Source of the DNA: Basidiobolus meristosporus CBS 931.73
Lineage: Eukaryota; Fungi; Basidiobolomycota
DNA: 64,000 bases
Direction of reading: 5' to 3'
Assembly: GCA_002104905.1 (NCBI GenBank)
Contig: MCFE01000098.1
Coordinates: 62,001 to 126,000 of the forward strand
Below the pieces are notes generated by a model. The model saw only the letters and a program-made list of their open reading frames with translations, made no database searches and was not told where the DNA came from. The first letter of the stretch is position 1. Every line of letters starts with the position of its first letter. The position numbers were made by a program, and so were the translations under genes. Shown here one piece after another: positions 5,720 to 64,000 of the stretch.

Positions 5720-8240
5720 TTGTATTATTGAACTAATTACCCATGCATTAGGGCTGCTTAACTTCTCAATTACAAAGGCATAACTATCTCCATGTTCACA
5801 TCTGTCCTCAGTATATTCCAACTCTTGCTGACTATCCTCCATATGCCAGCTGTTCACATCCATGATGGACCTGAAGGTAATATTCTTGATGAGATTGGAG
5901 CATAGTAGTGCCTGCTACTTGACTTGTCTTCCTATCTCCCCACACATCTGCTTCATAGGAAACCTACAAAAGGTGAAGCAAGGTCCAATATTTGCAACAC
6001 ACCAAGCAAGATGGAGTAACAAATGGATACAGCAGTGGCAGAGATAGAAGCATTCAGCTTTATGTTTGAGGTTTAGCAGCTCAAATTTTGTCACAAACTC
6101 TTTGCACAAAAGCTGCAGATGCGCCAAGTTGGCATTGGTGTTCTGCTTCTGAATAAATATTTCAACAATGTCCACTTATGACTCCTAATGCTTCCAATGT
6201 ACACTTGGCTGAAATGGCTTCAGAAGGCCATTGAATACATACATATTCAGCTCATCCAGTCCTTGCATGTATTGTTGCATATGCATATGAATGTGATTGA
6301 AACCCATGAGAAGTACATAGGGTGACATATGCCCTGTAGTATCTTGCCAATTCTTTCAAATCCCTCTGGTATCTCAAAGGGCACATTTAGCTTGAAATGT
6401 CACATGAGTAACTGGCCATTTTTATTCAAATATTGTTGAAAAGCAAATACATTGCTCCCAGTGGAAAGCTTTTGCTCCAACAGATACCCTCTATCTTAAG
6501 TATCTCTGGTTTCCAATTAATTCCATGTTGAGGCCAATGGCTTATGGGTTGCCAACTATGCTGCATTTATATGCTGAATTCTGTATGTTCACTCTGTGGA
6601 AAAATAATGTCCATAGTGTTGGTGTTTGGATTATAATAATATGTGTGAGCTATGGAGTAAGTCTCCTGGATCTCACACATTTGACAGCAATACTGTCCAT
6701 TGTGCCCAGAAAAGTCAGCTATCTTTCTGACTGTTGGGGTATCTCCACTGCAATTAGTAATATGTGCTTTTATATAATGGACATTTACTGTTTTCCTGCT
6801 GGAAAGCATACAAAATTCATCCAGCAATGGATACAGGTAGCTATCCAGGTTGGACAGTGATTTAGGCCCAGATACAAGTGAGACTACCATCAGATCTTGG
6901 CTCTGATACCATTAGATAGGTGGTGGATTCAGGTTGATGAGAATCAGTGGCCAGCAGGATTTGCTGGTAGAGTTCTTATTTAACAAAAATACACCAAGTG
7001 CCAAGACAAAGGCATGGTCATACATACCTGCCAGGTAGCCCTTGCTTCTTAGCTGCTTGTAATGTTTGGCATCAAATATATTTGATATGCTTGCGCTTGA
7101 TCAATACTGAGTGTGGCACTTTATAGCCTCACAATACTTGTAGTACTGCATGAGCTTCTTTATATGAGGTATTACCAGAATACATCTAGGGTGTGAGTGA
7201 TATTTTCCCCCAACACTGGTAGATTCCTAACAAGTTGGACACCTTGAAATGGTGACATTTTCTGATGTGAACTGTTGTATCCAAGAGAAAAGTGTAATAA
7301 ACACTTGAATGAGTTAACTGAACCCAAGTGACAGCTAAGTGCAGAATCTTAGAATTGTCAAGGGTGACAGAAATATTAGCAAAGAAGTTCTGGTCTAATA
7401 TTGGTTGATGAGTTGGGCTATAAAGGCAACAGAGTTGGTTTGCTATGCTAGATATGCTAGACTTGGGTGGAAACTACAACAGAATTGTTGAATTTTTAAT
7501 TTTGCTGAGGCACAAGCTTAATTTTGTACAGACTCACGCTAAACCAAGAGGTTCAGTAAACTTTGTTTATATTTCTCAGATCAAGTCACATTAGTAAGCA
7601 CTAAAAGACTGGACTAATTGAAATCTGTTGGAGTGTTCATAGGTGCATAAGATAAATGAGAAATTGCATCATTAAACAGCTGATGTCTTGGCAACTGCTA
7701 AGAGGTTGGATAGATCTCAGATGACTAATCACTTGGAAAGGCTTAGCAGATCAGTTGAGGATGCAATGACCACATGAGAATTGATCAGTTGAGGCAGCTA
7801 AAAATAGATTCTGAGCAGTGATAAAATAAATCATTACTGGGATTGGTTATGTTTGGTTAGGGAAAATCAGTCAGGGTACTAGATTTTCTAGTGGAGTAAA
7901 ATAGGCTAAGTTCTGAATGTTGATGCACAACATGCACTCCATGCAACTGTTAACACATGCTGGTATCAGAACAGACTCTGGGTCATGTGCAGCCAGCTGC
8001 ATGATGGTTTTTCATTTATACCATGTATATGGTAAGTTGCATTCTGGGATGATTTTGGCAAGAAGTAGTAGTAGATCCTCAAAGCCCTCATTACTGATAT
8101 AAGTGGAACAGACCACTTCTTTAGCAACAGCATCATATCATTCACCAGTAGATGGATTACTGGGCTCACTTGATTCTGTAAAGTATCCATGGCATTTCTT
8201 TCTGGGGTGTTTTCCCATTGCATAATGGGATTTTGTTAAG
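5720..8240 (-). mobile_element. Degenerate CACTA/EnSpm transposase region, copy 2
   Basis: Collinear with 410-2240 (HLLLHLAWCVANIGP, GPKSLSNLDSYLYPLLDEF, GDTPTVRKIADFSGHNGQYCCQMCEI). Interrupted by a solo LTR. Confidence 0.75.
7273..7932. repeat. Solo LTR, family H
   Basis: TGTTGTATCC...GCACAACA termini. 5-bp TSD TGAAC/TGCAC. The CACTA host sequence is continuous across it. A second copy lies at 39312-40006. Confidence 0.8.
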
Positions 8241-45990: not shown

Positions 45991-46719
45991 ACCTTCCTAG
46001 TTACAGGTCATAACCTAACATTCATGTAGATCTACCCTACAACAGCTCCCCGCAAAGCAAGCGAACTCTCTGTAGGAAACCCCTCCCCAAACAAGCCCTA
46101 ATCCAATTTTGAAGAGTCAACTTACCACCATATTCCAGCCTCTACTTGTCTCATGCATTAACACGTCCCATCTTAAGCAAACACTACCAGGGCAGCAACA
46201 GCCCGGATTTATTCAAGCAATCCATCCTACGGGAAGATCATGTGATGGCCGGAAATGAACCCACGTATGTCCCGATTTCCCATTCTCCGACATGTCTGGC
46301 ATGTTGGGGCCCTACTGAAGATGCGGCTACCCGTGCAACAAACGAAGATCGAAACGGTATTGGAAGGGACGGGAACCTTGAGGTGTCAGAGGGAACCCAT
46401 TCGATCACGCCATCGCTCATCACCAGGTGGCAAATCAAGTGATCCGAACTCACACACCGTTGTAACTTGACCAATCTCGGGAAGAATCAGGCGATTGGCG
46501 AGAGGGATCCCCGTCGTAGCTACCATGATACCAAACCCGGTTGGTCCAGCCGATACCCAGTTACCTTGGGTATTTAAGTTAATAATAACCGCGATGCAGC
46601 GTAAAAATATCAGCACACGACCGACGACTCGCGTCACTCATTGGCGAGGGGTTATTATTATCCTCACTCGGTAGGGGAATATATATAAGGTGCGTGACAA
46701 CCTACGGACTTGGGTAACG

Positions 46720-47576
46720 ATGGGCCGCAAGAAGATCAAGGTAACCCAGCCGACCTGCCTTCCTTTGGTATCCTCGACGATCTGATCCTTACCTTCGTCC
46801 CCAGATAAAAACCATCGAGAACGATCGGCAAAAGACCGTCACCTTCACCCGTCGCCGAAGCGGTCTGATCAAGAAGGCCCACGAGCTGGCGGTGTTGTGC
46901 GACTGCAAGGTTGTCCTGCTCATGTTTGACGCCAGGGATGCATGTCATATGGTACATTCTCTTTATCTACACTGTCTTGTCTATCTCATCTCACCCCGTC
47001 CCATGCGTCCGAGTAGTATTCATCCGAGGACGACCCGGAGGAGCTGATCCACAAGTACTACCACAAGGAGTTCAACACCGTCGAAGGGAAGGTAAGCGTT
47101 TGCTTTGGTTCGTCCGGTACGGGAATGGGCTGATGACGCTTTTCCAGCGCAAGGGCAGCAAGGCCAGACCTGAGGACAGGGACGCTCGCTCCACTGTGGT
47201 GAACGAATACCGGATCACCACCAACGGGGAGGGGTCGGAGAACATCCAGGTGAAGCAAGTGAGGAATCTTCACAACCCCGGGTCGATCCTTCTACCCCTC
47301 GAGCAGCCCGTAGTCGGCTCTTCCCAGCCCTTCATGCCGTTGCCACCGGCCATCCCTACCCTCGAGGACTACTCTATCATCCCGGTGGAGCATGAGGACA
47401 ACTATCACCATACCGATCCCGGATACCTGAATCAATTCGGAGAAGCTAGGCCCTTGCTGGAGTATCCCGCCACGGAATCCGAACCATACGGAGAGATGAA
47501 ATACTTCTATCAAATCCCAACCACCAGGCCGTCGCTCTACGAAGCCAACAGCTACCAGTCCCATCCGCCGTTCTGA
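46720..47576 (+). CDS. MEF2-type MADS-box transcription factor, 4 exons (46720-46740, 46805-46951, 47017-47091, 47148-47576), ~223 aa
   Basis: Spliced N-terminus MGRKKIK|IKTIENDRQKTVTFTRRRSGLIKKAHELAVLCDCKVVLLMFD..|YSS. GT-AG introns of 56-65 nt. TATA-like ATATATAAG at ~46681. Confidence 0.9.
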
Positions 47577-47685
47577 CCGGGCCCTGTTGGTGTATATAAT
47601 TGCTGTATACCTTCTTATCACTACATACGCATCGCTCTCGAGATATCTACCTAATAAATTCCCCTTATCAACAACCAGGTGGGAC

Positions 47686-49076
47686 TTACAAGCCTCTGAT
47701 GAATCTCCCCAACTTCTCGGTTTCTTCCCGAGCGGCTGCCTTGCAGTGGTCGGGGGTGGTCGGCTCGGGATCCCCCGCTCGGAACTCGTGTGGACCCTCG
47801 TCTAGCTTGTGCAATTCGTAGGAGTTCGGAGGTTGCGCGTGGGATTCTTTGGCAGGCATGCGATAGAACGATGAGCCAGTGACCTCACATCGGTGGGACC
47901 CAAACATCTTCCACACCGCCCACTGCATAAACCGAGCGTGTGTCGAAGGGCAAAGCCCGGGGGAGTGGATCTTCAATGGGGTCGAGTCATCCTCCTCCAC
48001 GCAATACGTGACAATCAGTCTCTCACGGACGACCAACAAGGAGTTGTGGAGCGCGGGGTCCATCAGGAACGCCACTAAATTAAGGACACCTAGGAGAGGG
48101 TTCTCAGCAGGGGCACTCGGAAAACATTCACTCGCTTCTTACCTGGCAGATCGGTGCCAATGACCGACCAGTAGTTGATTTGAGGATTCATCGAGTGTTG
48201 GAACTGCAACCACAGCTCCATCAAGATGAAGCCACCCTGGGTGATGATCGGGATGAGGGTGTAGAGGGCGATCCTGGCGACCAAGCGGTTGATGGTCTTC
48301 TGGGTCTTTCTGCGGCGTGGTTCGGTCGTCTCGAGCCCGCTCAACGAGTAGTTCCTATCGATGTTGGAGATCCTGCGTAGCCTCATCTCCAGTTTGATGA
48401 TCACCAGGGTCACCACCACCAGACAGTAAATCGACCCGGCCACCACCCAAAACAAGAAAGAGCCCCATTCCCACACCTTCGTACGCGTGCTGGAGTACCT
48501 CTTCCACCAGCACACCCCGACATTGTCGTCCCAGCCTACCCTCCCTGCGGCCCAAGCGGGGACGGTCGTGGCAAACGCAAGCGATGTGGACACCAGAAAG
48601 TAGATGCGCTCAAGGCTCGGGTGGTATGGTTTCTCGTGCAGAAAGACGTATTGCAGGTTGAATGCGATCATGCAGGTCAGGAAGATGTAGTAGTTGGTGA
48701 GAAAGATGATGGCCCTAGGAGGGGGTTAGTTCGGGTGGCCGCGGGAACGAGTCGACTTCACAGAAACCTACCAGGCGGAAAAGTCGCACGCAGGCCCGCT
48801 CACCGCAACGAAGGTGAACAGAATGTAGACGATCGCCTTGAGCACGTCCACCGCGGATATGGCAGCAGTCAGGCGTAGGGAAACTCGATCCATGAGCTTC
48901 GGCTCGAAGGCTCGGATCGAGAAGTAAATGACGAGCACCAGGGAGCCGCATATTATGGACGCGGAGTTCAGAACGACATTGATGATGGTCACCGCGCGGT
49001 TTTCATGATCCCCCTTCAACACAAGGTCGTAGCCCGGGTCGAAATCCCAGGAATTCAGCGAGGTCGTTGTTACCAT
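47686..49076 (-). CDS. GPCR-like 7TM protein (Git3/cAMP-receptor-like), 3 exons (49076-48772, 48714-48143, 48089-47686), ~426 aa
   Basis: Hydrophobic segments plus family-like motifs: RVSLRLTAAISAVD, TM3 Cys in GPACDF, GWDDNVGVCWW, LYTLIPIITQ, GVLNLVAFLMDP. Exon lengths sum to an intact frame. Confidence 0.8.
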
Positions 49077-49413
49077 GAGGAGAGAGACGGTGCCGTAAAA
49101 AAACTGGCTATCCGGCCCCGGTCAGGTAGTTATACTCTCTTGCCATTCGGGTCACACATGGTTCAATTGGCTGGCAGTGATAGAATTTAATCTTCGTTCA
49201 CCTTGCAACCCCATCGGCCAGTCCCGGTTACACAAGAGGACATTGGTCCAGAACTAACGTATGGAGGCTATCTGATGGCGATTTCTCTAGGAAGGCTATT
49301 GAGTGGTGATTTCTGGTGTTACCCGAAATACCAGTCTTGATGACGATTCGTGTGGTAATTCGTGTGGTAACGATGGTTTATTATTATTATAACAAAACGG
49401 TGGCAATCTAGAA

Positions 49414-52165
49414 CTAGTATTCTGCATAGCGCACTTCGCCATTATCCATCACCCATTCACAGTACTTTCTCAAGAACTCATCCTTCATGCCCACCGTCTC
49501 GCTATCGCCGATGACACAGAGGTGACGCTTCGGGCGGGTGATTGCCACATTCAGACGTCGGGAATCCGAGAGAAATCCAACCTCCCCGGAGTCGTTGGAT
49601 CGAACCATCGAGAAGATCACCGCTTCTATTGGACATCGTCGATTAAGTAAGCGAGCCAGCCACAAACAGATCTCGATCACCTACCTTTTTCTCGTCCTTG
49701 GAAGCCGTCCACTAAACAATGCCATTGGGTCAGTAGGGAAGTGTAGTCGATGTTATCATAGCAATGACCCACCGGAGCCTATTTCGAGTTCTGGATAAGC
49801 CTCCTTCAAGGCTAGCGTCAGCATCTTGACTTGGGCGTTGTACGGGGTGATCACGGCGATGTCCTCCTCGTGGAGCCCTGCTTCGATGAGACTTTTGACG
49901 TGCTCCACCACCACAGTGACCTCCCCCTCGTTGTATTTACTGTCGCCGTCCTTCTCGCTGTCCCCCGCCTCGGCCAGCTCGTTCATCCCCGCATGGGCCG
50001 TGTCAATGAACACCAGTGGGGCGAGGGTGTTGTCGGTCTCCTCGACGTCCGGAATCTGGCTGAGCAGTCGTTCACGGACCGACGCATGCGCCACCAGCTT
50101 GTCTTCGTAGAATTCCATCGAAGGGAATTTCATGATCATGTCGTGCATCCGATATTGCGTGGTCAGCATGTACTTCACCTTGCTTCCGTAAACAGCGAGC
50201 ATGCGATCAAACAGGGTGATCTCCAGGCTTTTTCCGGAGGAGGGGTCGGGTCGCTCGGTGGGGGAGGAGGGGTTGTTGCGATTGGATTTGAGGGACTTTA
50301 TGGTTGGCGGCAGCTGCAGATGATCCCCGGCCTATTCACAACAACAATGGTCAGGGATGGTTACGCACGGATCACAACTTGGATGGCGGTTACCAAAATC
50401 ACTTTCTCGGCCTTGAGAATGGCGATCCAGCATTCCTAATTAGATCAGAGAAGCATTGGTTAGTGCGCGAAAGGTGCGTAGTCCCGAGATCCCTGCTTAC
50501 AGCTAACAATACAAGTGGTTAGAGGGGATCCATGCTGTGACAAATGATTCCAATCCCACCTTCCAGCGCCTGTGTTGCTTCGTCAATGATCACAACGTCA
50601 AACTTCCGGTTCTTCATGGTCTTGCTTCCACACCTGCGACAAATCTCGCATTGTTATTCCCTGCAAAGACGGCCAAGTTGGAGGGGCCTTACCCATTCAG
50701 GGTGCTCAGGATCACCGGGGTCTCCTCGAGCAGCTCATTCACCACCCTCCCTTCCCGCTCCCTGAATTCTTTCTTGAGGTCCTTGAGCTGCTGGTAAAAG
50801 CCCTTTCTCTCGGAGCGGTTCCTCGACTTCTGAATACTCGCCATGGTCTGGTCCATCTCCTTCCGTATGTCGCTCACCAGTTGCCCTTGATCACACGTTT
50901 GTGTCACGACGTCGAGGGCGTGCTCCATCACTGCAGGCAAGATTCGCGCAGGATGGCCGACTCGCAGAATATTGATTCGGCATTTGGCCAGCCTTTCGAC
51001 CAGATTGTCGACCGAGATATTCGAGGGGCCACACACCAAGACCTTTTTTTCCTGCTTCACCAGCTGTCGGATGATCTCGATCAGCGTATACGTCTTACCC
51101 GTCTAGCCAGGTTGAAAGCGCTGTTTAGCCGCATGTCTTCACTAGGAAACATAAGATTACCTACTCCTGAGCACAATGGACATGAGTAAGTGGGCCGTAG
51201 CCGGGAAGCCATGATGAATCTCTAACCTGGCGGGCCGTGGATCAAGGCGATCTCGTTGGAATTCAGCCCGAATTTCACTGCTTCCTTCTGCGAGTCGTTC
51301 AGATTCTTGTCGAAGAAGGCGATTTTGTTGAATTTTGTCGAGGCTGATGGGGGCTGGAGATTGAAGAGAACCCGAATCAAACTGGTCTCCCGCGCTCGCT
51401 TGAGGTCCATCATGGCCCATTTCATTCTGAAATTGGAAGGCCTTAGCTATGGTTTGCATATGCATGTTTGCTATCGGTCTACCTTTCGTAGCTGATATTG
51501 TTGGCCAGCTTTGTTCTGATCGAATACCAATAAAAGTGGTGAGTGCCTACTCTATCCAATTAATAGTACGCTTCCACCATACATTTTACATCTGTCCTCC
51601 CATTCAACTGGTATCTCCTCCTTCACTGCTACGGTGATAACCGTATCCGTGACCTTCAGTACAACCCCGTCGACGAAAGGAATGGTTTCGTTGGGCTTCA
51701 AGGGTGCCCCGCTTGTAGAACCGGAGCCGGTGGTGACATTTTTGGCGACAGCAAGAGTAGTTCCGCTTGGGGTGTTTGCGGAAACGCGAAGATCTTCGGT
51801 GATTGCAATAATATCTCCAGAGCGGATGCGATGTGGTAGAAAGGCTGAGAGATGCAGGGGCGGCTCAAAGTCAACGACGCTTTGTAATAAGAAATATAAC
51901 ATGTAATAATAATATAAACTCCAGTTAGTCGACTCCTCTCAATCTCTAGACTACGATTGGTACTTCCAAAAAGCGAACATCAGATCTCGTACCTCTTTCC
52001 GCCAAGACCGGTTCGAAGTGCTGTAATGCGCAGACCACCCAAGGCAACTCCACGTCTCTGCAGCTGTTGTATCGATTTTTGACCTAGTAGTTCCGAGTTC
52101 TCATCGATTTCTAGTTGTCTTTCTTTTTCCAACAGGTCCAGTTGGTTCTTTACAAACGTCTCCAT
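49414..52165 (-). CDS. HCS1: SF1 UPF1-like helicase of the Hcs1/SMUBP-2 (IGHMBP2) subfamily, 12 predicted exons including two 2-nt micro-exons
   Basis: N-terminus FVKNQLDLLEKER..E..E and RTGLGGK. Motifs LNDSQKEAV, HGPPGTGKT, PSNISVDNL, IIDEATQA, AGDHLQLPPT, QYRMH, TPYNAQV, SVDGFQGREKEAV, RRLNVAITR. Confidence 0.9.
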
Positions 52166-52331
52166 TTCTAGTGCCCGCTTGGTGTATGGGGGAAATTGTT
52201 GTTAGAAACCGCTAAATAACCACAATAATGCAAGATATCAAATTTGGTGTGCATCCCATTTAGAAATTGTATTAACTGGTTGATTTTATTAGTATCTATG
52301 AAATCCAGACAATTCCCAGTGAATTCTGCAG

Positions 52332-55300
52332 TTACTCGCTATCCGACAATACAATGGCTGATCGCTTTCTCTTCGAAAGTGGACCTGGCCCGTCGCTTTG
52401 CTTACCCCGTCGTTTGGAGCTTCTTGTTTCTCGCTTGGTGATAACTGGGGATGGTTGTTCGTTCAGGGAGCCCAGCTCCTCCGCTGAGTTAGCCTCAATG
52501 TCTAGAAATACAATTAGTGAAAGAATCCGGAATGCTCCCAATCCCAAAACTAACTTACCGATCTCATCGATGTAGAAGACAGGATAGAGCTGCTGGAAGT
52601 CAAACGAATTCACAATGGTCTTGAGTGGAGCTGTGACTGGAGAATCTTTTAACAAACGCTCTTTACAGTGGATAAAATGTCAGTTCTTCTGAAAACTTGG
52701 GTGGCTCGGTTGTTGCGTCTAACATACCAGTAAACTCTTCCAGCGCACTCCCACTTAATTGAACACTCGACAGCCAAAGGTGCAGTGAGTCGAGATGGAT
52801 TTTGGAACGGTCCATTAATTCAGATTCGTCGTTCGCTCCCGCTTTGATTTCAGTGGCAATCTCAAGAAAGATGTCACCAAATGCCTGCGCCAGAGAGTCC
52901 GACCACAAGCGACTCCATTGCGTTAAACACGATCTGAAGAAAGGATCACTTCCACCGTCTCTGTGATTTCCTAGTGTAGACACGATCTGCTTGGTCGGGG
53001 GAACAGTACGGAGCAGGGCTAACAAGCCGTTCAGCGCCTCAGGGTTAGCTGGAAAGAAAACGTAAATAGGGAATTCGACATGAACAATCCATCAAAGCCT
53101 ACCATCTGCTTGTAGTTTATCAAATAACGAAGCAAAAAGCATCTCAACAAGCTCAGTTTTCCCGGCTATTTCAGCAGCGATGAGTTGCCAGACACAGATC
53201 TGCTCAAAGGTCTCCCATTCTAGGGTCGGTCCTAAAGATGGCAATGATAAGGGAGCTGGTCTTCGACCCTTTCGTGGACACTCTTACCAACTGATGTTTC
53301 GTAGTCTGACTGGCCGAACATGGTGAGCTCGTCAGAATTCAGGCTTGTCATGAGTTGATAGACCTGGCAACTGAAAGGTTAGTTATCAGGGCCCCAGATG
53401 GGCAAGGAAGCCAATTGTACCTGGGAAGGATCCATCATTGCAACGGCCAAATGCAAGAAGTCGGTGTTGCCAACACAGATTTCCGGGTATTTCTTGAATA
53501 TATACGGCAGAACTTCGTAAAACAGGTTGATTTGACTTTCTTGCAAGCTCTAAACACTAGCTGTCAGTCAACATGCCTATCGCCTATTGAGTAATGCTGT
53601 TACCATACCGTCATGTCTTTGAGTAGTTGCTCCTTCAATGGAGCATCCTCTACTGTGGCAAATGCGGTGTATTTGTCTAGCAGCACATTATCAAATTTGT
53701 TTTTAGAGCCGTGAACACTATGTCTAGATAGCAGTGGTCAGTTAACAGGAGCCTAGGACTTTCATGATCATCAACTCACTTAAATATGCACAGAATCCAT
53801 CGGAATCCCACTGCCTCGACTTTTCCGGAGATTTTGTTTAAAAGAGTCAACATCCGAGTTTCCAAAGCGGGATCTGATGAGGAGGTCCAAGCTTGATCCA
53901 ACAGAATACTTATCAAGTCTTTGCTCTCTTCATCCTGTGTAAAATAATCTTGGTCCAGATCGGTTAAGGTGGATTTTCTCACGGCTCTAGATAAAGAAGG
54001 GGCGAGGTTTTCGGGCGGGACAGCCTGTGGCGAGGTGTTCAGTCAAAATGAATTGGTAAACAATACGTGTTCTTGCGTACCGTCTTCGCAAATACTTCTA
54101 GAATCTCTTTCAAAAGAGTCTCGGATTTCTCGATCTCTTCATTTGTGGTGGCCTCTCTAAAATCTTTGAGCAGGTCACCGAAAAGCCATAAGCTGGCTTC
54201 ATCGACACTTTCTTCTTCTTCATCCTCCTCCTCTTCTCCTTCCCCTTCCCCTTCTTCTTCCTCGTTCTCTACATCCAAGCTTGCTTCATTCTCTGTCCCC
54301 TCTTCATACTGCTCCTCGGTTTCGAAGTCTTCATTTGCACCCTCTAAAACATCAGACTCTTGTTGGTTCTCCATCCCGTTGAAATCCATACTCATCTCGT
54401 CGTAGGGGTTGGAATTTTCGTTTTGATCGCCCTCAATAAACCCGGATTCATTGTTCTCTCCTTCGGTCAAGCCTAGAGAAGGGTTAATCAGAGGGGTCGT
54501 TATATTGGTCTATGATCAAAAGATCATCGCTACCTGAATAACTAGACGCTACATCTTCTTCTGCAGTCTCCTCTGCACCATTCTCTTCTTCAGGATCTTC
54601 TTGGAAGGCTTGTCCTAGTTGGCCAGTAAACGAGCTCTGGATATCCATTTGGAATGGATCTTTATCATCCTCGAATCCGCTAGAGGTTGCTTGTGGCTCA
54701 GAAGAATCAAGGGAGGGATTGTTGAGGCTGTTCTGATTGACCACATTTCCAAGTATTTGGCTGATTCCTTGTCGGACGCTTGAAGGTATCGCTGGATTCC
54801 CCAACATATTGTTAAACGACCGGATAACTCCCTTCTCCATGATCGTTTGCATGGCGGAGCGTACATGCAGTTTAATATCGTTGGCTTTTTCCGGGTAGTA
54901 TTCCTCTACTACAAATTGTAGAAACTCGAGTAGGATACTAGTAATGAATGCATACTTCTCCACGGATCTCTCCATCAGCAACACGGCGGGTTCTGAAAGC
55001 GATGGGTCAACAGGTGAGGGGTTTTGAATAAATTTAACTGAGGGCACGTACCGATGTTCATAATGTTGTCTATGTTAGGATCGTAGAACAGCCAATCGTA
55101 AAACAATGCTAACTTAGCATTGCTAGCGGCAGCATGAGACTACAAGCCATATCAGCATAGCTCGTCGTGTGAGAAAACAATGAATCTCTAGCGTACCTTG
55201 ATCCCTCTAATCAGCCCACCAATGATTACATATCTAGGCACAATATCCGACGCTAGGACTGCATTTGTGGGATGGTAAACGCCACATATGTATCGAATGA

Positions 55301-56811
55301 GATCACAATACAGCGTCTCGGAATCTGGCGTTGACAGGTAGCGGCTGATGAACCACTGAAGATTTCGCTGATGGCGGCCCCACCGTAACTAGTGTCAATC
55401 TAGAGGTTAGTTCCATGGTATTGTTGACCACCTCTACATAAAGACTCACGCTTTCCATGATGTGAAGAAGCTTAAGCTCCATATCAAACGTTAGTCTGCT
55501 TTGCAGATAAATCTTTGGAGTAGGTACTGAGAGAATGTGCCAAACACCTAGATTGCCGCATAGTAAATTAAGTGTCCAGCACCTAGGTTCAGCACCGCTT
55601 ACCTCGAAAGTGTGGACTTATCTTCTCGGGCCGATAGAAGAGGTCGATCCAGATCTGTTCGAACTCGGGGATGCGCGCTACATCCTGTAGAGCTCGAATT
55701 AGATCGCGCCCGATGTTGGAACACTCTATGAACTTTGCTCTGGTTAGCTGGTGGTTATCGAAGGTGAGCATCTGCCAGTGGAACGTGGCTTACTTTTTCG
55801 CGTAGCAGATACACGCAGAAATCTGTCTCCTTCTGCCGTAGCTCCAGATATTTCCCATGATCCAAGATCACTCTTATAAACGTATAAAAGGATGATGCAA
55901 TGACTACAGGAAATAGATTCATCCACTGTCTAGAGCACCCATCTTTGCTTAACAACTAAATCCTTTTTAAAGCCAAGTGAGACGAAGACCAACCTATTCT
56001 TGGAGAGTAAATCGACCATGGCTTCGCAGAATGACAGGTTCTTCTGTGTTACATCGCCACCTGGACAAATACGTGAGTAATCCAGTAAAGCCCCCATCAA
56101 TTGACCTCGACATCTCACCTCTGATTTGGCGGAGCAATATCGTATACAAACTGTCTATTCCCTGCACGTTCATTCCTGTCAGTTGATCAACCATCCATAG
56201 AAGCTTTGAAAGGTAACGCTCTAGTTAGCACATGGCTCCACTACAGGCAAAGATAAGGACCAACCTGGCTTCTGGTTTTGACATTCATCTTGCAAAATCT
56301 GGGCAGGGCTGCCAAGTACTTCAACTTCCCTACGATATACGCAAATCCATCTCTAACAATGAAATTGAGATATCTAAAATACTGGAAACCACTTTAAGGT
56401 TGAGGCCGGACAATTCTCTCTCGAGGCTGGAAGTTGGATATTACCTCGTTGGCGTTCGCACTATCCGATAGAATACCGTAGAGTAGACCTTTTGCAAGTT
56501 GCGCATGCTTGGTCATACTTTGCGAGGCCTGGCAGGTAGCCGGAATGTTGTCAACACGAGTCCCAGGTGAACATATTCAACTGAAGCAAACCTTTTCCTG
56601 CAATTCGTTATGTAGCTCGATCTCTGATTTTTCTGCTATGGTCGTCTTGAGCTCCTCAAAACAAGCAGCCATTTCCTACACGATCAAAATAATCAGCACA
56701 GCCCTTCACGAAACTAAGCTAGACAATCGAAGGTACTTTATCCAACGCATCTATATCATCCACTGGTTCTAGATCCAACAGAATGGAACAGATCTCACTT
56801 GTCGTTGTCAT
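52332..56811 (-). CDS. INTS3: Integrator/SOSS complex subunit 3 homolog, ~20 exons
   Basis: Spliced translation gives [77 protein letters not shown] and NPEAL, matching INTS3 motifs from memory. Long acidic insert and basic C-terminus. Confidence 0.88.
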
Positions 56812-57113
56812 GTTGCTTTACAGACAAACCTACGTGAGGAACAACGATAGAGTATGAATCGCAGATAGGATTGTTTCAGAATTGGAGGATTTTCAAATTG
56901 CCTACCAAATTTATCGAACAAAAGGATTGATCAATGTTGAAGTTGGATTATGTCCTCAGTCACATCGTTCAGGAGAATCGTCCCCAAGGGTTGGCAAATA
57001 TTTACCAGCCTTCGAGAGAGGTGGAGGGGAGAGATCGATTCTTTTTTATTGTGGACTTCTATCAAAACTCCGGCTTATATGATGGAATATTAAGGCTTCT
57101 CTGAGTTACGAGG

Positions 57114-58476
57114 TCACTGGGCTAGCACCTCACTGATTGCTGATTTGGAGTTGTCTTTGGGGGGACCGGCTCCATATTTCCACTTGGGATGAATGGGCTT
57201 TCGATGTATGAATACTTCAAACCCGTTCAACACTCCCCCCAACTGTAAAAACGCTGCAGCGAACACGTACACCCAAGCCTGATGATACCCTTTAAGTTGT
57301 AGTATCATGTGAATGATGGATGGAGTGAAGTGAAACACGTGAAGGAATAACGCTATTCCCAAATTCTCCGTATGTTTTCTATGTTTTTGCACGGCGTTCA
57401 TGATTGTCGTGCTGTAACGGTGGTTCGAGTTGATACTCAAAGTCCGCTTGACCTTATCTGGAGAAGGGACTTCTCGGCGTGCCTCAGCAGTAGTCTTGAA
57501 AGTCATATCATGTATGACCAACAGATAGCACACCAACACTACAAACAGAACAATGTAATGAACGCTAAGGAACAATTTCAGAAACACCCGGCCAGAGGAC
57601 GTATGTTCGTTCACTAAGCACCTTGTAGCTGTGAATGAATATTAATCGTTCGGAAAGTGGAGGCTTTTTGGCTACATACCAATACATATCTGGACCAAAG
57701 CTCCGGGTGTACACACCAGCAATGGCTGTTCCAAGGCAACTAAGGCCGCATCCTATCCAGACCTTCCAATCCCACCTGCCCAGATAGACATCAATTTTAC
57801 GAACCAGTTGTAAGTAGGTGACTACAGCAACGGTTCCAACAACCGTCATTTCTATGAAGGTTCCGAGATAAATGATGCCCCCTATAACGGCACAGGTCCT
57901 GGAGGACGGCAGCTCATCCCAGTACATGGTATCCGCCACCATGAACAGAGTGATGCATCCCAAGAACAAATCCAGGATCGCAATATAAAACGGGAATCGA
58001 ATGGAGGAAGATAGGTGTGGTTTCTTGGATTCATTTTGATTCCGATACTTGATCTCCTGGAAGTCAATGTAGGACATATATATGACTCCCGACGAAGCGC
58101 ATACATTCAACGTGGCGGTGATGGTGGTCAGCATGTAAAAGAAAATGGATCCATTTGGAGCGAAGTCTGAGAGGAAGTGGTTCTCACCGAGCTCCTCCAC
58201 GTTTGTGCCGTTGTGGGCCTGCTTGGGCTTGTGTCTCTCCTCGCCATGCCTTCTATGACCACCCCCGTGGCTAGTCTGGTTTTTTGGTTTCTTTGGGAGA
58301 TCGCTCTGAGGCTTAGGCCGACTTGAATTAGTGCTAGCAGCCGGGGTCACTGGCTCACGGCGACGAACGAGGTGTACTGAAGTGGAAGCATCCTGGACTG
58401 TTGAAAGAGATAGATTTTTGTATAATACAGTGCAAATCAGCAATAGTCCAACTAGAATATAGCCAATCCGAGTCAT
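57114..58476 (-). CDS. GPCR-like 7TM protein with an N-terminal signal/anchor and polar ectodomain, 2 exons (58476-57680, 57621-57114), ~434 aa
   Basis: SSIRFPFYIAILDL, RTCAVIG, GRWDWKVW, FGPDMYWC and LQLGGVLNGF..F resemble Git3/CAR-like receptors of early-diverging fungi. Confidence 0.75.
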
Positions 58477-58526
58477 ACAAACTAGGCCCTAATTGCTATG
58501 TTATGGCCTTCGTTAAAACAAATGGT

Positions 58527-58568
58527 GGGTTAAGTGGGTTAGCCGGGTTAGTTGGGTTAGTAGGTTAG
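58527..58568 (+). repeat. Five GGGTTAG-like units with ~9-bp period
   Basis: GGGTTAA-GT-GGGTTAG-CC-GGGTTAG-TT-GGGTTAG-T-AGGTTAG. Confidence 0.7.
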
Positions 58569-59051
58569 AAAAGGGCGGTGGAGGAGACAAAGGGAAAGCC
58601 AGGGCAGATCAAGTCCACATATATAGATAAATGCGGGTGAGAGCGTGTGTGGTGGAATATCAAGATACAGAACATCGCTATCGAAGACAATGGTATTTCC
58701 CATCAAACCAGATTCACACGCTCCAATGCATGGCGACAATGGTCTGCACGCGGTCTATCCGTCAGAGCATTATCAAGATGTCGCAAACAATCGAAGATAT
58801 TTCCCCTATGTGGAGCACAATCTCCCGCCCTGCATGAACGTTGATGCAACTCTAATCCTGGCATTGTACCTCTCCAGACAAGCGTGGCCTACGGTTGTAA
58901 TGACTTTATTGTGCTGGAGTGGAGTCTAGAAATCACACCAGTGTGATGCCCATTAGCCACACTCAACGATGAACATGAATCAAGAGAAAAATTACAGAGA
59001 TACGATGCATTTGATTTTCATTATATAACTGATATACAAGTAGCAAGTAGA

Positions 59052-60281
59052 TTATTGTATGTTGCACTTCGGGGCTGGTGACACTTCTCTGGCACCAGGA
59101 GACATGAGGTCCTCGATGTCTGCAGTCCCGCAGTCTGCATTGGCGCCTCTCTGGGCCTGGGTCTCGAGTACGAGTTGTCCGCATGCTCCGGAAACATCCT
59201 GGCCTTTTTCCTGACGAACGGTACAGCGAATGTTGTATTTGTTTTTCAACGTGTTCTTGAAATATTCTGTGCTCTCAGCTCCGGGGGCACTGAACTCAAT
59301 TTCTGGGCTGTAGATTGGGTTCCAGGGAATCAAATTCACCGTGACATCTCTGTCCCTGAGAAGCTCGCCGAGCTCGTCGATATGCTCCGGTAGATCGTTG
59401 ACACCGGATAATAGTACATACTCGATGAACACCTTATTCCCAGTCTTCTCCTGGTAGGTGTCAATGGCCCCCATCAATTTGTCTAGTCTGTATGACCGGG
59501 CACTAGGGACCAACTGCTCTCGGATTTCCTGGTTAGGGGCATGCAACGATAGCGCTAAAGACACTTTGGGCAAGTCAGTTGCGAGCTTCAGAATGTAAGG
59601 AATAACGCCAACAGTGGATACGGTCACTCTAGAAGGCTTGAGGCCAAAGTAACGAGAGTCAATCATGAGTTTGACTGCTTGGGTGACGTTCTTGTAGTTG
59701 TTGAGAGGTTCGCCCATGCCCATGAATACGACATTACGGATGTCCGCTTCTTTTCTCGCGTGCATCAGTTGCTCAACAATTTCGGCTGCGGTCAGATTGC
59801 CTTGGATTCCCATGGTTCCGGTCGCACAAAAGGTGCAGGCCATTTGGCAGCCCACCTGACTAGATATACACAAGGTGGCTCTTCTACTTGTACCATCAGC
59901 AACCAATTTTGGCTTCGTCTCCCCCTCCGAGGCCTCATCGTTCTCGGGGGCAGGCTTTAAACTTAACGGCTCGTAAAACATAATGACCGACTCCACTTCC
60001 AAACCGTCTTGCAAACGAACAACCAGCTTGATGGTGTCACCCGACTTGGAGACTTTCTTATGGATTACCTTACTCGTGCTGAGTACGTAGTTTTGGGACA
60101 GATAGTCCTTCGCCTTCTTTGGGAAATCCACAATCTCGTCATAGTCAGTGGCGGAGCGAAGAATGAGATTGGAATATAGGCTATGAAGATGCTGGGGGCG
60201 AATCTTCAACTCCTCGAACGCTTCTTCTACCGAAGCTTGGTCGAATATGGACTGGGGATTTAACACTCTTTTGGGTGGCAT
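59052..60281 (-). CDS. rlmN: RlmN-type radical-SAM RNA methyltransferase, intronless, ~409 aa (an upstream in-frame ATG is at 60347)
   Basis: CISSQVGCQMACTFCATG (CxxxCxxC plus the first catalytic Cys), NVVFMGMGEP, TVSTVG, LALSLHAPN, EYVLLSGVND, NLIPWN, and GACGQL (second catalytic Cys). Confidence 0.92.
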   Translation of the reverse strand: MPPKRVLNPQSIFDQASVEEAFEELKIRPQHLHSLYSNLILRSATDYDEIVDFPKKAKDYLSQNYVLSTSKVIHKKVSKSGDTIKLVVRLQDGLEVESVIMFYEPLSLKPAPENDEASEGETKPKLVADGTSRRATLCISSQVGCQMACTFCATGTMGIQGNLTAAEIVEQLMHARKEADIRNVVFMGMGEPLNNYKNVTQAVKLMIDSRYFGLKPSRVTVSTVGVIPYILKLATDLPKVSLALSLHAPNQEIREQLVPSARSYRLDKLMGAIDTYQEKTGNKVFIEYVLLSGVNDLPEHIDELGELLRDRDVTVNLIPWNPIYSPEIEFSAPGAESTEYFKNTLKNKYNIRCTVRQEKGQDVSGACGQLVLETQAQRGANADCGTADIEDLMSPGAREVSPAPKCNIQ

Positions 60282-60710
60282 GTTGTTCGACTGGACACGC
60301 TCGTCACGTATGAACTTTAAGGTTGGAAATTTTTTTATTTTTTTCATTTTCCAGGGATTTTTTCACCAGTGAGTGCATCCGTCCTGTGGGGATCATTGGT
60401 GGGGAATTCACATGCGGCGATTCGTGATGGTCCGACGCAATATTGATTGTGAGGATAAACCTTAAATCTCCGATGCGATTTCTCCTAGCCAGATTGAAAC
60501 ATACACACACACTTGGGCGTCAATGGCGCCAAGGCTCCGTGACTGTTTGTAGCTCTTGGTAGCTGATTTCTACAAATCATGGGCTACGGCCTGTTTGTCT
60601 CCACTTGGTACAGTCAGGTCAATGCAGATCATACGAATTTGAAGAGAGATGAAACAAAACTCCACCATCCTACCAATGAACATCAGGTGTTGCCCTTGGG
60701 ATGTATGGTG

Positions 60711-60734
60711 GTGCACGTCACCGAAGTGACGTCA
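60711..60734 (+). promoter_or_regulatory. Paired CRE/ATF-like motifs (CACGTCA and TGACGTCA) upstream of DUF4449-like gene 1
   Basis: Conserved with the same spacing at 63502-63525 upstream of the paralog, while the spacer has diverged. Confidence 0.5.
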
Positions 60735-60788
60735 ATCCGACTGCTCTATATAACCAGGAGAGGCCGTGATACAGCCAGCATTTCAACT

Positions 60789-62942
60789 ATGGACAACAAA
60801 CAGAACGAGCTTCCCCCTAGAGTGCACCATCCAGCATCCAAGGAACAAGAAGCGCTCCAGAAGAAGGAACACATTACCGAAGTGATTCATGCCGCGCAGC
60901 AGGGAAAACTCCCCACCACTGTACAGCTGACCGATGCCATTGAGCAACTTCAGGAGGATAATTCTCTTCACCATGCCTCAGCCAACATGAGCGCCTCTGG
61001 CCGAAGGGTGATGGCCGATACGGAAAACCTCTTGGACTCCACCAAGAGATTGTTGACCGAGAAGAATGCCGATGATCAGATCCAGAATATCATCTACCAC
61101 AGCACTCAAGGTGGAATGGCTGCCCGCTCCGGAAACGAGATCACCCAAACCAAAGAGCAACTCTCCGACACTGCAGGTCAAACAAAAGGCCTGCTCTCCG
61201 ATGGAGCGGAAAAGATCACCCGTGTTGGCTGGTTGCTTGTGACCTCATCCCAATTCCGCCGATTGATGAATGATGTGACATCCATTTTCCAGGAATTAGT
61301 TGCAAGCAACATCCCTAATCACCCAGAGCAGGAGGAGACCGTCAGAGACACGAGTAGTTCGAAGTACACCAACGACTCTGGAATTCCCCATGACCATGAG
61401 GCAACAGTTGACGAGGCAGGCGAACGTGTCCAAGAGACTTTGCAGAAGAGCGGCAAGCCACTCTATCAAAATGCGAAGGAGACGGTGAAACCGTACATCA
61501 AACAAGCTGAGGACGGGGATATGCCGGTGAAGGAGGCGGCTAAGGAATCGATCCAGGAAATGAAGCAGGGCATTCAGCAACGGTTGAAAAACGTACGTCT
61601 CTCATCGAAACAGGAAGATCACCTCATCAACCGCATGAGGAATGTCTTCCGGGAGCTCCAGGAAAACCCCGAGTTCCAGGAAGCTATCGATGAGCTATCG
61701 GATATCGCCAGCACCCTGAAATCCCATGGTATGGATGCACAGTCGCTTGTGGCAGAGACAGCACAAACTAAGAAAGAGGCGGGGGGTGATGACTTGACAA
61801 TCGCTCGAGCCAATGCCAAGGAACTAGTGGAGAACTTTGCCGGCAATAAGTCGCTTGATCCCTTGATACAGTCCATCAGCAAGCTACATAGCGAGTACTC
61901 TGTGGACGAGGAGCTGTCGGCGTTCGTCAGAGACTTGAAAGAGTTCATCCGTCGCTCCATTCGCGAGAGCCAGTTCACCGATCGACCAGAGTACAAGAAG
62001 GAGGTGAGCGGGTTCATTGACAAGGGACAAAACATCATGGACCGCAAGTACCGTCCACACTTCCAGCAGATCAGCAACGAGGTCACTAGCTTCAATACGG
62101 CTCTGCAGCACGATCGGACCACGCAGGCGTTTGCACGTGATCTGGAGAAACTCACGCAAGACGTGTTCCTCGATGAGAGCGGGAAGCCAACCATCAAGTA
62201 CGATCTTGTCAAGGACTTTGCCAAGCTGGTTCCGGTGATTGCGAAGAAACTGGAGTATCTTCCGCTACCAAGGGTGGAGAACTCGGACGAACAGTTTGAT
62301 GTGATACTCGACAACATTGTACTCAAGTGCTCAAACATCGCCCCTGACTACATTCATCTCAGAACAGACACCCTGGTAGACACCAATCCGGAAACCAAGC
62401 AGAACTTCCACAACAACGTCTACATCAAGTTCGCAAACATCCAAGTGGAGGCGAAGAACATGGCATTCTACTACAAGAAGAAGACGTTCCCCAAGATGAC
62501 TGACGTGGGATACATTGACCTCACGATGCCCGATGACGGCATTACCATGGACATGACTTTAAACACCACTCCTGCACCCGACCCGGTAACGGGGCGCAAC
62601 CATGTGTATGAAGTCAAGCAGGTGGGAACATCAGCCAAGGATCTGAAACTAAAGATTCACAACTCCAAGCACGATGTCCTATACAAACTGCTCTCACCGA
62701 TCATCAACTCCAAGGTCCGAAAGATCATTGAGGAGCAGGTTCCAATCAAAGTACACGAAACCATGATGAAGATCGAGGAACAGCTAGTGAAAAACATGGA
62801 AGAAAGCAAAGCGCGTATTGGCTCCAGCACTGACCCATCCAGGATAGATCCTGCCCAGCTAACCAAGGAGCCCAACCCTCAATGGGGATCTCAGGCTTTT
62901 GACATGCAGCAACCAACGGTGCAACACATACGTGAGCGCTGA
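60789..62942 (+). CDS. Uncharacterised fungal protein of the DUF4449/DUF5923 type, intronless, 717 aa
   Basis: Long helical region (GKLPTTVQLTDAIEQL, LVTSSQFRRLMND, VFLDESGKPTIK) followed by LPLPRVENSDEQFDVILDNIV and a beta-rich C-terminus. The family assignment is from memory. The start was chosen by alignment to the paralog. Confidence 0.65.
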   Translation: MDNKQNELPPRVHHPASKEQEALQKKEHITEVIHAAQQGKLPTTVQLTDAIEQLQEDNSLHHASANMSASGRRVMADTENLLDSTKRLLTEKNADDQIQNIIYHSTQGGMAARSGNEITQTKEQLSDTAGQTKGLLSDGAEKITRVGWLLVTSSQFRRLMNDVTSIFQELVASNIPNHPEQEETVRDTSSSKYTNDSGIPHDHEATVDEAGERVQETLQKSGKPLYQNAKETVKPYIKQAEDGDMPVKEAAKESIQEMKQGIQQRLKNVRLSSKQEDHLINRMRNVFRELQENPEFQEAIDELSDIASTLKSHGMDAQSLVAETAQTKKEAGGDDLTIARANAKELVENFAGNKSLDPLIQSISKLHSEYSVDEELSAFVRDLKEFIRRSIRESQFTDRPEYKKEVSGFIDKGQNIMDRKYRPHFQQISNEVTSFNTALQHDRTTQAFARDLEKLTQDVFLDESGKPTIKYDLVKDFAKLVPVIAKKLEYLPLPRVENSDEQFDVILDNIVLKCSNIAPDYIHLRTDTLVDTNPETKQNFHNNVYIKFANIQVEAKNMAFYYKKKTFPKMTDVGYIDLTMPDDGITMDMTLNTTPAPDPVTGRNHVYEVKQVGTSAKDLKLKIHNSKHDVLYKLLSPIINSKVRKIIEEQVPIKVHETMMKIEEQLVKNMEESKARIGSSTDPSRIDPAQLTKEPNPQWGSQAFDMQQPTVQHIRER

Positions 62943-63185
62943 AGTGCCGATTTTCTCGCGACCCGATTCTGACCAACAGATGAGTTCGCCTCGAGATGCC
63001 TGATTTTGTGGTACTTTCTTCTGTACATTCCTGACCTTCATCGTAAATAAACCTTGCGCATTTGCAGCGTTGTCTTGTCTTGATAGCTATTGGTAGAGTA
63101 GGGTTAATTTATTTGACAAAATTGCTCCAGGAATTGCCGCTTGTTTCAGTTTTACAATGGTCAAAAAGGCATCAAGGATAGTTAC

Positions 63186-63242
63186 ATATATATATATAGG
63201 CAGAGGGAGAGGGAGAGGGAGAGAGAGTATGTGTATGTGTGA
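63186..63242. repeat. Compound microsatellite (AT)n, (GAGGGA)n, (GA)n, (TATGTG)n
   Basis: Directly visible. Confidence 0.7.
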
Positions 63243-63501
63243 GGTAAGCGAAAAAGTAACACAAAGGAAGACAGTTGAATGCATGTAAAAATGGCGAAGG
63301 GAAGAGGGGGGTTGGTGGAATGTTTTTCTCTGGTCCGACGGTGTGGAGAGAGGATCTGGACTAACACTCTGGTATGTTGCTCAACTGAACACGCTTACCA
63401 CTTATGGCCTTTAAAGTTGGAATCTTTTTTATTTGTTTCATTTTCCAGGGATTTCTCACCATCTAGTGGAGATCATTGGTGGGGAATTTACATGCATGGT
63501 A

Positions 63502-63525
63502 GTGCACGTCACTTAATTGACGTCA
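63502..63525 (+). promoter_or_regulatory. Paired CRE/ATF-like motifs upstream of the DUF4449-like paralog
   Basis: GTGCACGTCA-CTTAAT-TGACGTCA, about 60 bp before the ATG. Confidence 0.5.
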
Positions 63526-63585
63526 ACCCGACTGCCTGATCTAACTGAAAGGCCGTGACACCGTGACACAATTAGCATTTCGGTT

Positions 63586-64000
63586 ATGGACAACAATCAG
63601 AACGAACTCCTTCCCCCTAAGGGGCCCTATCCAGCATCCAGGGAACAAGAAGCGCTCCAGAAGGATGAGCACATTACCGAAGTGATTGAGGCCGCAGAGC
63701 AGGGAAAACTCCCCACCACTGTACAGCTGACCGATGCCATTGAACAAATCGAGGAGGACATTTCACTGGACCATGCTTCGATCAACATGAGCGCCTCCGG
63801 TTGGAGGGTGATAGCCGACACGGAAAAATTCTTGAACTCTACTAAGAGATTGTTAGCTGAGAAAGATGCCGGTGACCAGTTCCAGAATGTCATCTACTAT
63901 GGCATCCAGGGCGAGAGGGCTGCCCGCTCCGGAAACGAGATCACCCAAACCAGAGAACAACTGTCCGACATAGCAGTCCAAACAAAGGGCCTACTCTCCG
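63586..64000 (+). CDS. Tandem paralog of 60789-62942 (runs off the window)
   Basis: MDNNQNELLPP...EQGKLPTTVQLTDAIEQI aligns with gene 1, and the frame is open to the window end. Confidence 0.85.
   Translation, partial: MDNNQNELLPPKGPYPASREQEALQKDEHITEVIEAAEQGKLPTTVQLTDAIEQIEEDISLDHASINMSASGWRVIADTEKFLNSTKRLLAEKDAGDQFQNVIYYGIQGERAARSGNEITQTREQLSDIAVQTKGLLS

What the first reader, a model, noticed from the sequence alone, without database searches (positions are those of the whole stretch)
51165..51166. 2-nt micro-exon (GA) completes the Walker A glycine of the Hcs1/SMUBP-2 helicase
Seen: HGPP-G| ends at 51227 (phase 1) and TGKT starts at 51102 (phase 0). A single 124-nt intron shifts the frame, and the alternative sites I tested (the 6-nt exon GAGTAG, the acceptor at AAACAG) run into a TAA stop. 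CTCAG|GA|GTAGGT splits the gap into 60- and 62-nt introns, the typical size here, and restores GPPGTGKT. Established: exons of 1-3 nt are rare and usually missed by annotation. Inference: skipping would be an on/off switch at the ATP-binding site.
Basis: partly seen in the sequence, partly recalled or inferred. Interest (0 to 1): 0.8.

Follow-up and report, generated by a model that had tools for sequence, protein, structure and literature searches.

The report
Two-letter exon inside helicase ATP site
A DNA-helicase gene of the fungus Basidiobolus meristosporus can only be read in frame if two letters (GA), sitting alone between two short introns, are spliced in to finish a glycine of its ATP-binding loop. 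The same layout occurs in a second Basidiobolus species and in the distant fungus Phycomyces, and it breaks the public gene annotation in all three.

Summary
On the minus strand, exon 4 ends ...HGPP-G at 51227 (phase 1) and TGKT starts at 51102 (phase 0). The 124-nt gap has no single canonical intron that keeps the P-loop. CAG|GA|GTAGGT splits it into 60- and 62-nt GT-AG introns and gives GPPGTGKT.

- **Gene model:** the full 12-exon Hcs1/SMUBP-2-type model (676 aa) closes its frame only with this exon and a second 2-nt exon (CT, 50502-50501).
- **Conservation:** B. ranarum keeps AG|GA|GT at the same place (60/2/74), although introns and third codon positions are saturated. Phycomyces blakesleeanus has AG|GG|GT (62/2/70), a synonymous Gly change.
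- **Chance:** such a motif arises by chance in about 2-3% of shuffled gaps per species.
- **Other fungi:** among 80 environmental fungal loci, about 45 have no intron here and 32 have a single phase-0 intron. Three further loci have a single phase-1 intron. Basidiobolus and Phycomyces carry both.
- **Annotation:** all three public annotations fragment the gene at this site.
- **RNA evidence:** no RNA run was listed, so splicing is inferred, not shown.

Exons of 1-3 nt are already documented in fungi, so this is a new member of a known kind. The scan's first readers noted both 2-nt exons of this gene before, in a separate note on the second one and in a note from an overlapping window. The "on/off switch" idea has no support.

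The parts
49414..52165 (-). Whole Hcs1/SMUBP-2-type SF1 helicase gene: 12 exons, 11 GT-AG introns, 2031 nt CDS = 676 aa plus stop
   Evidence: Exon-by-exon phase tracking gives no internal stop and a total divisible by 3. Pfam PF21138 (1B domain), PF13086 and PF13087 match. The best solved structure is human SMUBP-2, 4B3F/4B3G.
51227..51426 (-). Exon 4 (200 nt), ends ...IALIHGPP + first G of the Gly codon (phase 1)
   Evidence: Same length (200 nt) in B. ranarum.
51167..51226 (-). Intron 4, 60 nt, GTTAGA...CTCAG. Candidate branch site CTTAC. CAG is the first AG after it.
   Evidence: Also 60 nt in B. ranarum, with an identical donor block.
51165..51166 (-). 2-nt exon GA, completing GGA (Gly) of GPPGTGKT
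   Evidence: It is the only canonical solution that restores Walker A. GA is conserved in B. ranarum and is GG in Phycomyces.
51103..51164 (-). Intron 5, 62 nt, GTAGGT...GGCTAG. Candidate branch sites CTAAA or TCAAC.
   Evidence: This phase-0 position is shared with 32 of 80 environmental fungal loci and with L003.
50693..51102 (-). Exon 6 (410 nt), TGKTYTLIEIIRQL...STLNG
   Evidence: Pfam AAA_11, 89 bits. 90% identical to the B. ranarum K7432_006086 fragment.
50503..50559 (-). Intron 7, 57 nt, after DEATQALE-G (phase 1)
   Evidence: The position is shared with Phycomyces.
50501..50502 (-). Second 2-nt exon CT, completing GCT (Ala) between ...QALE and ECWIAIL
   Evidence: Conserved in B. ranarum (69/2/74). 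Not present in Phycomyces or in 78 environmental loci.
50436..50500 (-). Intron 8, 65 nt, GTAAGC...AATTAG, branch site CTAAC

Best explanation
The window (Basidiobolus meristosporus CBS 931.73, MCFE01000098.1) carries an intact, selected Hcs1/SMUBP-2-type helicase gene. Two ordinary short U2-type GT-AG introns occupy positions only 2 nt apart inside the Walker A glycine codon: phase 1 inside GGN and phase 0 after it. The dinucleotide GA between them is therefore a genuine 2-nt internal exon.

Inferred mechanism: each intron is recognised on its own by intron definition, with its own donor, branch site and first-AG acceptor. The acceptor of intron 4 and the donor of intron 5 lie within one U1/U2AF footprint, so the two introns are most likely removed one after the other. 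This resembles a recursive-splicing ratchet point that leaves 2 nt behind. Inclusion is constitutive and obligatory, because joining exon 4 directly to exon 6 gives a stop three codons later.

Inferred origin: the layout is a retained (or re-created) combination of two intron positions that occur singly in many other fungi. It is not a regulatory device.
For: 1. Only the 2-nt exon restores HGPPGTGKT in B. meristosporus (60/GA/62), B. ranarum (60/GA/74) and Phycomyces (62/GG/70).
2. The change from GGA to GGG keeps glycine.
3. Between the two Basidiobolus species, third codon positions are 45% identical and introns 46-56%, which is saturated. Positions 1+2 are 90% identical and all ten compared exons have identical lengths. 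The block TCAGGAGTA.GT is nevertheless kept. This argues for purifying selection and against a pseudogene or an assembly indel.
4. The chance of a suitable AG|GN|GT is 2-3% per gap.
5. The gap (124-136 nt) is about twice the usual intron length of 56-67 nt. Fungi with a single intron here mostly have 46-65 nt.
6. Each of the two positions exists alone in other fungi. Phase 0 occurs in 32 of 80 metagenomic loci and in L003. Phase 1 occurs in L004, L087 and L088.
7. Eight of the 11 intron positions in this gene are shared with Phycomyces (read).
8. Public annotations break exactly here: fragments of 170/174/222 aa in B. ranarum, 187/169 aa in Phycomyces, and 79/222 aa in B. meristosporus.
9. 2-nt exons are shown by long reads in another fungus, with 57 in Coprinopsis (PMC12230235). 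A 1-nt exon with read support is known in Fusarium (PMC12940212).
Against: No transcript evidence: no RNA run was listed for this stretch, so neither the junction nor the order of splicing has been seen. The intron 4 donor GTTAGA is weak (T at +3) and its best branch-site candidate, CTTAC, is off-consensus. The micro-exon was found in only two lineages. Rhizopus and most sampled fungi lack it, so parallel gain at the CAG|G proto-splice site cannot be excluded.
Confidence: 0.85

Rival explanations
1. A single non-canonical intron. The exon runs two letters further (CCA GGT, also Gly), and an intron starting TA (AA in Phycomyces) and ending AG is removed in one step.
For: In all three species the two letters after CCAG are GT, so GGT would also encode Gly.
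Against: Those GT letters are simply the canonical donor. /TAGAGA and /AAGCAC match no known U2 or U12 donor class. This reading does not explain the conserved internal AG|GN|GT, or why the gap is twice the normal intron length.
Confidence: 0.04
2. The locus is a pseudogene or carries an assembly indel, and the apparent micro-exon is a coincidence.
For: Public annotations show only fragments. No RNA holder was listed.
Against: Three independent assemblies show the same arrangement. All exon lengths are identical between the two Basidiobolus species, with 90% identity at codon positions 1+2 against 45% at position 3. The 676-codon model has no internal stop. Chance of the motif is 2-3% per species.
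Confidence: 0.02
3. The micro-exon is real but alternatively skipped on purpose. Skipping gives a frameshift, a premature stop and decay of the message, tuning helicase levels.
For: Skipping gives a stop within 3 codons in B. meristosporus, 9 in B. ranarum and about 16 in Phycomyces (read). The intron 4 donor is weak and strikingly conserved between the two Basidiobolus species.
Against: There are no expression or isoform data. Any frameshifting exon behaves this way if skipped. In Coprinopsis, omitting an exon of 3 nt or less creates a stop in 63 gene models (PMC12230235), so the property is not specific. The same genome holds several other 1-3-nt exons in unrelated genes according to unchecked scan notes, which points to a genome-wide structural feature rather than gene-specific regulation.
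Confidence: 0.08

Closest known systems
Ultra-short (1-3 nt) internal exons in fungi and plants: Coprinopsis cinerea long-read annotation (57 two-nt exons; PMC12230235), Fusarium CYP621A 1-nt exon (PMC12940212), Arabidopsis APC11 1-nt exon (PMC4674806)
   Same: A 1-3-nt exon lies between canonical AG and GT, inside a conserved motif (again a glycine codon in Fusarium). It is needed for phase compatibility. The apparent intron is about twice the normal length. It is conserved in orthologues and missed by automatic annotation.
   Different: This case lies in the Walker A loop of a helicase. It occurs in early-diverging fungi, for which no such report was found in the searched library. It is shared between two phyla, and each flanking intron position is also seen singly in other fungi. 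Unlike the published cases, it has no read support yet.
Recursive splicing at ratchet points (zero-length exons, AG|GTAAGT) and RS-exons (PMC6224609)
   Same: A 3' splice site sits next to a 5' splice site, which implies stepwise removal of the flanking intron segments.
   Different: Here 2 nt stay in the mRNA and are coding. The introns are about 60 nt, not tens of kilobases. Stepwise order is inferred, not shown.
Stwintrons (spliceosomal twin introns) and the 1-nt intron-shift model (PMC5587772)
   Same: These are complex intervening sequences in fungi removed by consecutive splicing. Orthologues show discordant intron positions 1-2 nt apart, explained by alternative loss of one of two introns.
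   Different: No splice signal is interrupted by the other intron. The two introns are complete and lie in tandem, not nested.
Hcs1 (yeast DNA polymerase alpha-associated helicase A) / human IGHMBP2 (SMUBP-2) helicase core
   Same: 1B domain PF21138, AAA_11 and AAA_12 are present. Motifs GPPGTGKT and DEATQ are present. The best PDB match is 4B3F/4B3G, E 1e-31, against 5e-6 for Upf1.
   Different: At 676 aa it ends about 30 residues after the helicase core, like Hcs1, which leaves no room for the R3H and AN1 zinc-finger tail of IGHMBP2.

Membership tests
Ultra-short (<=3 nt) spliceosomal exon | Exon of 1-3 nt directly flanked by a canonical 3' splice site (AG) and 5' splice site (GT), each belonging to a complete intron of viable length with a branch-site candidate | tested here: met
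CTCAG|GA|GTAGGT. Introns are 60 and 62 nt, against 56-67 nt for the gene's others. Branch-site candidates are CTTAC, and CTAAA or TCAAC. In intron 4 the acceptor is the first AG after the candidate branch site.
Ultra-short (<=3 nt) spliceosomal exon | Required to restore reading frame and a conserved motif, with no alternative canonical solution | tested here: met
   Enumeration of all GT/GC-AG one- and two-intron solutions in three species. The whole-gene frame closes only with it.
Ultra-short (<=3 nt) spliceosomal exon | Conserved in orthologues despite diverged introns | tested here: met
   B. ranarum has GA and Phycomyces has GG, a synonymous change.
Ultra-short (<=3 nt) spliceosomal exon | Junction observed in transcripts | not testable with these tools
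   The look-up of sequencing runs listed no RNA run for this stretch and its cap is one call. Read laying could therefore not be used.
Hcs1/SMUBP-2 (Upf1-like SF1B) helicase | 1B domain of the SMUBP-2/HCS1 type plus the AAA_11 and AAA_12 helicase core | tested here: met
   PF21138 at 46 bits (cut-off 27), PF13086 at 89 bits, PF13087 at 117 bits, tested exon by exon.
Hcs1/SMUBP-2 (Upf1-like SF1B) helicase | Closer to SMUBP-2 than to the paralogous Upf1 | tested here: met
   PDB search with exon 10: SMUBP-2 at 1.4e-31 against Upf1 at 4.8e-6.
Stwintron | An internal intron interrupts the donor, branch site or acceptor of an external intron | tested here: not met
   Both introns have complete, uninterrupted signals and are separated by 2 exonic nt.
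Regulated (alternatively spliced) micro-exon | Both inclusion and skipping isoforms present, and condition-dependent | not testable with these tools
   No RNA data.

The most novel reading that the evidence does not exclude
The two introns 2 nt apart were already present together in the common ancestor of Zoopagomycota, Mucoromycota and possibly Dikarya. On this reading the 2-nt exon has been spliced faithfully for several hundred million years. The 'phase-0 only', 'phase-1 only' and 'no intron' states seen across today's fungi arose by differential loss. This locus would then be a living intermediate that explains an apparent 2-nt intron slide without any sliding.
Probability: 0.35. Interest if true: 0.6.

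Novelty: new member of a known kind. Interest (0 to 1): 0.45.

Why it matters
1. **Annotation.** An essential-looking helicase is absent or fragmented in the public annotations of three fungal genomes because of two 2-nt exons. Phase mismatch plus a double-length intron is a simple signal that could repair such models.

2. **Intron evolution.** Two intron positions 2 nt apart coexist in one gene, and each occurs alone in other fungi. This gives a concrete case for testing whether discordant neighbouring positions arise from gain and loss rather than from sliding.

3. **Splicing mechanism.** A 2-nt exon with about 60-nt flanking introns, conserved across phyla, is a compact natural substrate for asking in what order, and how faithfully, abutting splice sites are used.

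Tried and rejected
- **RNA evidence.** The look-up of sequencing runs on window:49300-52300 listed no RNA run. The cap is one call, so read laying was not possible.
- **Single-intron and other two-intron solutions, including GC donors.** All either delete or expand the P-loop, or hit stops.
- **U12-type or AT-AC intron.** The donors GTTAGA and GTAAGC do not resemble /RTATCCTT (direct reading).
- **Conserved RNA structure across the gap.** Folding z-scores were -0.61, -0.16 and -0.64, not different from shuffles.
- **Second word search with exon 4.** It returned only 3 hits, all of the single phase-0 type.
- **Literature on micro-exons in Basidiobolus, Phycomyces or Mucoromycota.** No listed paper combined these terms.
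- **Joined model.** All family, PDB and homology searches were made exon by exon by reference, and frame closure was checked by phase tracking.
- **Big representative-protein search.** Not used, because the protein's identity was not open.
- **Third word search.** Left unused. A long intronless query such as L032 would mostly have returned Dikarya relatives.

Full report
**What is in the sequence.**
- On the minus strand, the exon encoding ...NSNEIALIHGPP ends with the first G of the next codon at 51227 and is followed by GTTAGA.
- 60 nt further the sequence reads CTCAG | GA | GTAGGT (GA = 51166-51165).
- After another 62 nt it reads GGCTAG | ACG GGT AAG ACG, i.e. TGKT from 51102.
- The Pfam AAA_11 profile aligns to the upstream exon up to profile position 26 and to the downstream exon from position 28. 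Exactly one residue is missing, the fourth residue of GPPGTGKT.

**Is there another way to splice it?**
- I enumerated every GT/GC...AG single-intron and two-intron solution around the gap that stays in frame without a stop.
- In the window, no single intron preserves the P-loop. The few in-frame ones delete ALIHGPPG.
- Among two-intron solutions, only 60 / GA / 62 gives HGPPGTGKT.
- A frame-restoring AG|GN|GT with both introns of at least 40 nt occurs in 2.7% of shuffled gaps.

**The whole gene.**
- Tracking phases exon by exon gives 12 exons and 11 GT-AG introns. Nine introns are 56-65 nt, one is 67 nt and the first is 113 nt.
- The CDS is 2031 nt, or 676 codons plus the stop, with no internal stop.
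- The frame closes only if a second 2-nt exon (CT, 50502-50501, completing Ala between ...DEATQALE and ECWIAIL) is also included.
- Exon-wise searches identify an Hcs1/SMUBP-2-type SF1 helicase: PF21138 1B domain, AAA_11 and AAA_12. The best solved structure is human SMUBP-2, at 1.4e-31 against 5e-6 for Upf1.

**Source and public annotation.**
- The window is Basidiobolus meristosporus CBS 931.73 (GCA_002104905.1, MCFE01000098.1). Its public gene calls contain only a 79-aa and a 222-aa fragment of this gene.
- In B. ranarum (GCA_040143965.1) the orthologue is cut into three models of 170, 174 and 222 aa. The breaks fall exactly at the two micro-exon sites: the middle model starts MDHQ-TGKT... 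and ends ...ATQALE-GNIPIFVSC.
- In Phycomyces blakesleeanus (GCA_040209145.1) the model starts MVHQ-TGKT..., and no N-terminal part is called.

**Comparative test.**
- B. ranarum reads CCACCAG | GTTAGAG...(60 nt)...TTCAG | GA | GTATGT...(74 nt)...TGTTAG | ACT GGC AAA ACG.
- Phycomyces reads CCACCAG | GTAAGC...(62 nt)...ATATAG | GG | GTTAGT...(70 nt)...AAACAG | ACC GGA AAG ACC.
- In both, the same enumeration again leaves the 2-nt exon as the only solution that restores the motif. The GA to GG difference is synonymous (GGA to GGG).
- Between the two Basidiobolus species the ten compared exons have identical lengths. Codon positions 1+2 are 90% identical, third positions 45% and introns 46-56%.
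- Neutral sites are therefore saturated, yet TCAGGAGTA.GT is retained in the middle of the gap.
- This excludes an assembly indel or a pseudogene and shows selection on the junction signals.
- Chance per gap is 2-3%. That gives about 5e-4 for two independent lineages, and less if B. ranarum is counted as a third.

**Where the two introns come from.**
- In 80 fungal loci recovered from metagenomes with the exon-6 profile, about 45 have GPPGTGKT uninterrupted.
- 32 have one phase-0 intron (GGN | GT...AG | ACN, mostly 46-65 nt). None has a micro-exon. Two end at the contig edge and one has its intron elsewhere.
- L003 is also phase-0, with a GC donor. L004, L087 and L088 have one phase-1 intron, G | GT...AG | GN. 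A Rhizopus arrhizus fragment is uninterrupted.
- So each position exists alone in many fungi, and Basidiobolus and Phycomyces have both.
- By direct reading, eight of the gene's eleven intron positions are shared with Phycomyces. This fits retention of an old two-intron state.
- The phase-1 site is, however, a classical CAG|G proto-splice site, so parallel gain cannot be excluded.
- The second micro-exon is narrower. Phycomyces has only the phase-1 intron there, and 78 environmental loci have none.

**Mechanism (inferred).**
- Both introns carry complete signals: strong donors for intron 5 (GTAGGT, GTATGT, GTTAGT), and a branch-site candidate 8-30 nt upstream of each acceptor. In intron 4 the acceptor is the first AG after its branch site; in intron 5 an earlier AG lies only 2-3 nt after the CTAAA candidate, probably too close to be used.
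- With about 60-nt introns, recognition is by intron definition, which is established for fungi.
- The acceptor of intron 4 and the donor of intron 5 are 2 nt apart, so U2AF and U1 cannot comfortably occupy both at once. Sequential removal is therefore expected, as at a recursive-splicing site.
- Exon 4 and intron 4 both end in CAG. The -4 to -1 context of the intron 5 donor is therefore the same before and after removal of intron 4, and either order is feasible.
- No significant RNA structure spans the gap.
- Skipping the exon gives P-D-G-stop in B. meristosporus, and early stops in the other two species. It would be non-productive.
- Nothing indicates that skipping is used as a switch.

**Comparison with what is known.**
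- Exons of 1-3 nt are documented. Coprinopsis long-read annotation has 13 one-nt, 57 two-nt and 27 three-nt exons (PMC12230235).
- Fusarium CYP621A has a read-supported 1-nt exon in a Gly codon, found by the same phase-mismatch and double-length-intron logic (PMC12940212). Arabidopsis APC11 has a 1-nt exon (PMC4674806).
- Unchecked notes of this scan report several more 1-3-nt exons in this same genome.
- Stwintrons and their 1-nt intron-shift model (PMC5587772) are the nearest evolutionary analogue. Here the introns are tandem, not nested.
- No listed paper combined micro-exons with Basidiobolus, Phycomyces or Mucoromycota.

**Verdict.**
The 2-nt exon is very probably real (0.85), on comparative rather than transcript evidence.
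- It is a new member of a known kind.
- Its added interest is the cross-phylum conservation and the coexistence of two otherwise discordant intron positions.
- The regulatory-switch reading is unsupported.

Noticed in passing
window 50501-50502 (minus), with introns 50503-50559 and 50436-50500: A second obligatory 2-nt exon (CT, completing Ala after DEATQALE) in the same gene. It is conserved in B. ranarum (69/2/74). Phycomyces has only the phase-1 intron there, and 78 environmental fungal loci have no intron.
   Followed up: yes
window 49626-49684 (intron 11) and 49685-49711 (27-nt exon): The intron that creates the 27-nt exon VDGFQGREK in B. meristosporus is absent in B. ranarum, where ...GREKEAVIF... 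is contiguous (L001 about 7566-7610). This is an intron gain or loss within the genus.
   Followed up: partly
window 51216-51227 and L001 6012-6023: The weak donor of intron 4 and its surroundings (GGTTAGAGATT) are identical over 11 nt in the two Basidiobolus species, while the rest of the intron is about 50% identical. There may be extra constraint on this 5' splice site.
   Followed up: no
L086 (MCFE01000098.1), L001 (JASJQH010000258.1), L002 (JBDFSA010000003.1): Public annotations of all three genomes represent this helicase only as 2-3 unlinked fragments. Gene order (Ints3, helicase, a gene of 426-450 aa) is conserved between the two Basidiobolus species.
   Followed up: yes
window 1-46000 versus 46001-64000: There is a sharp composition step. 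GC is 38-43% with positive GC skew over the first 46 kb, and 45-53% in the gene-dense last 18 kb. Other first-reader notes place transposon ORFs at 9-13 kb.
   Followed up: no
window about 48090-49076 (minus): The downstream neighbour has hydrophobic, multi-pass-membrane-looking ORF pieces (MVTTTSLNSWDFDPGY......LVVVTLVIIKLEMRLRR...) split by at least one short intron. It was not analysed.
   Followed up: no
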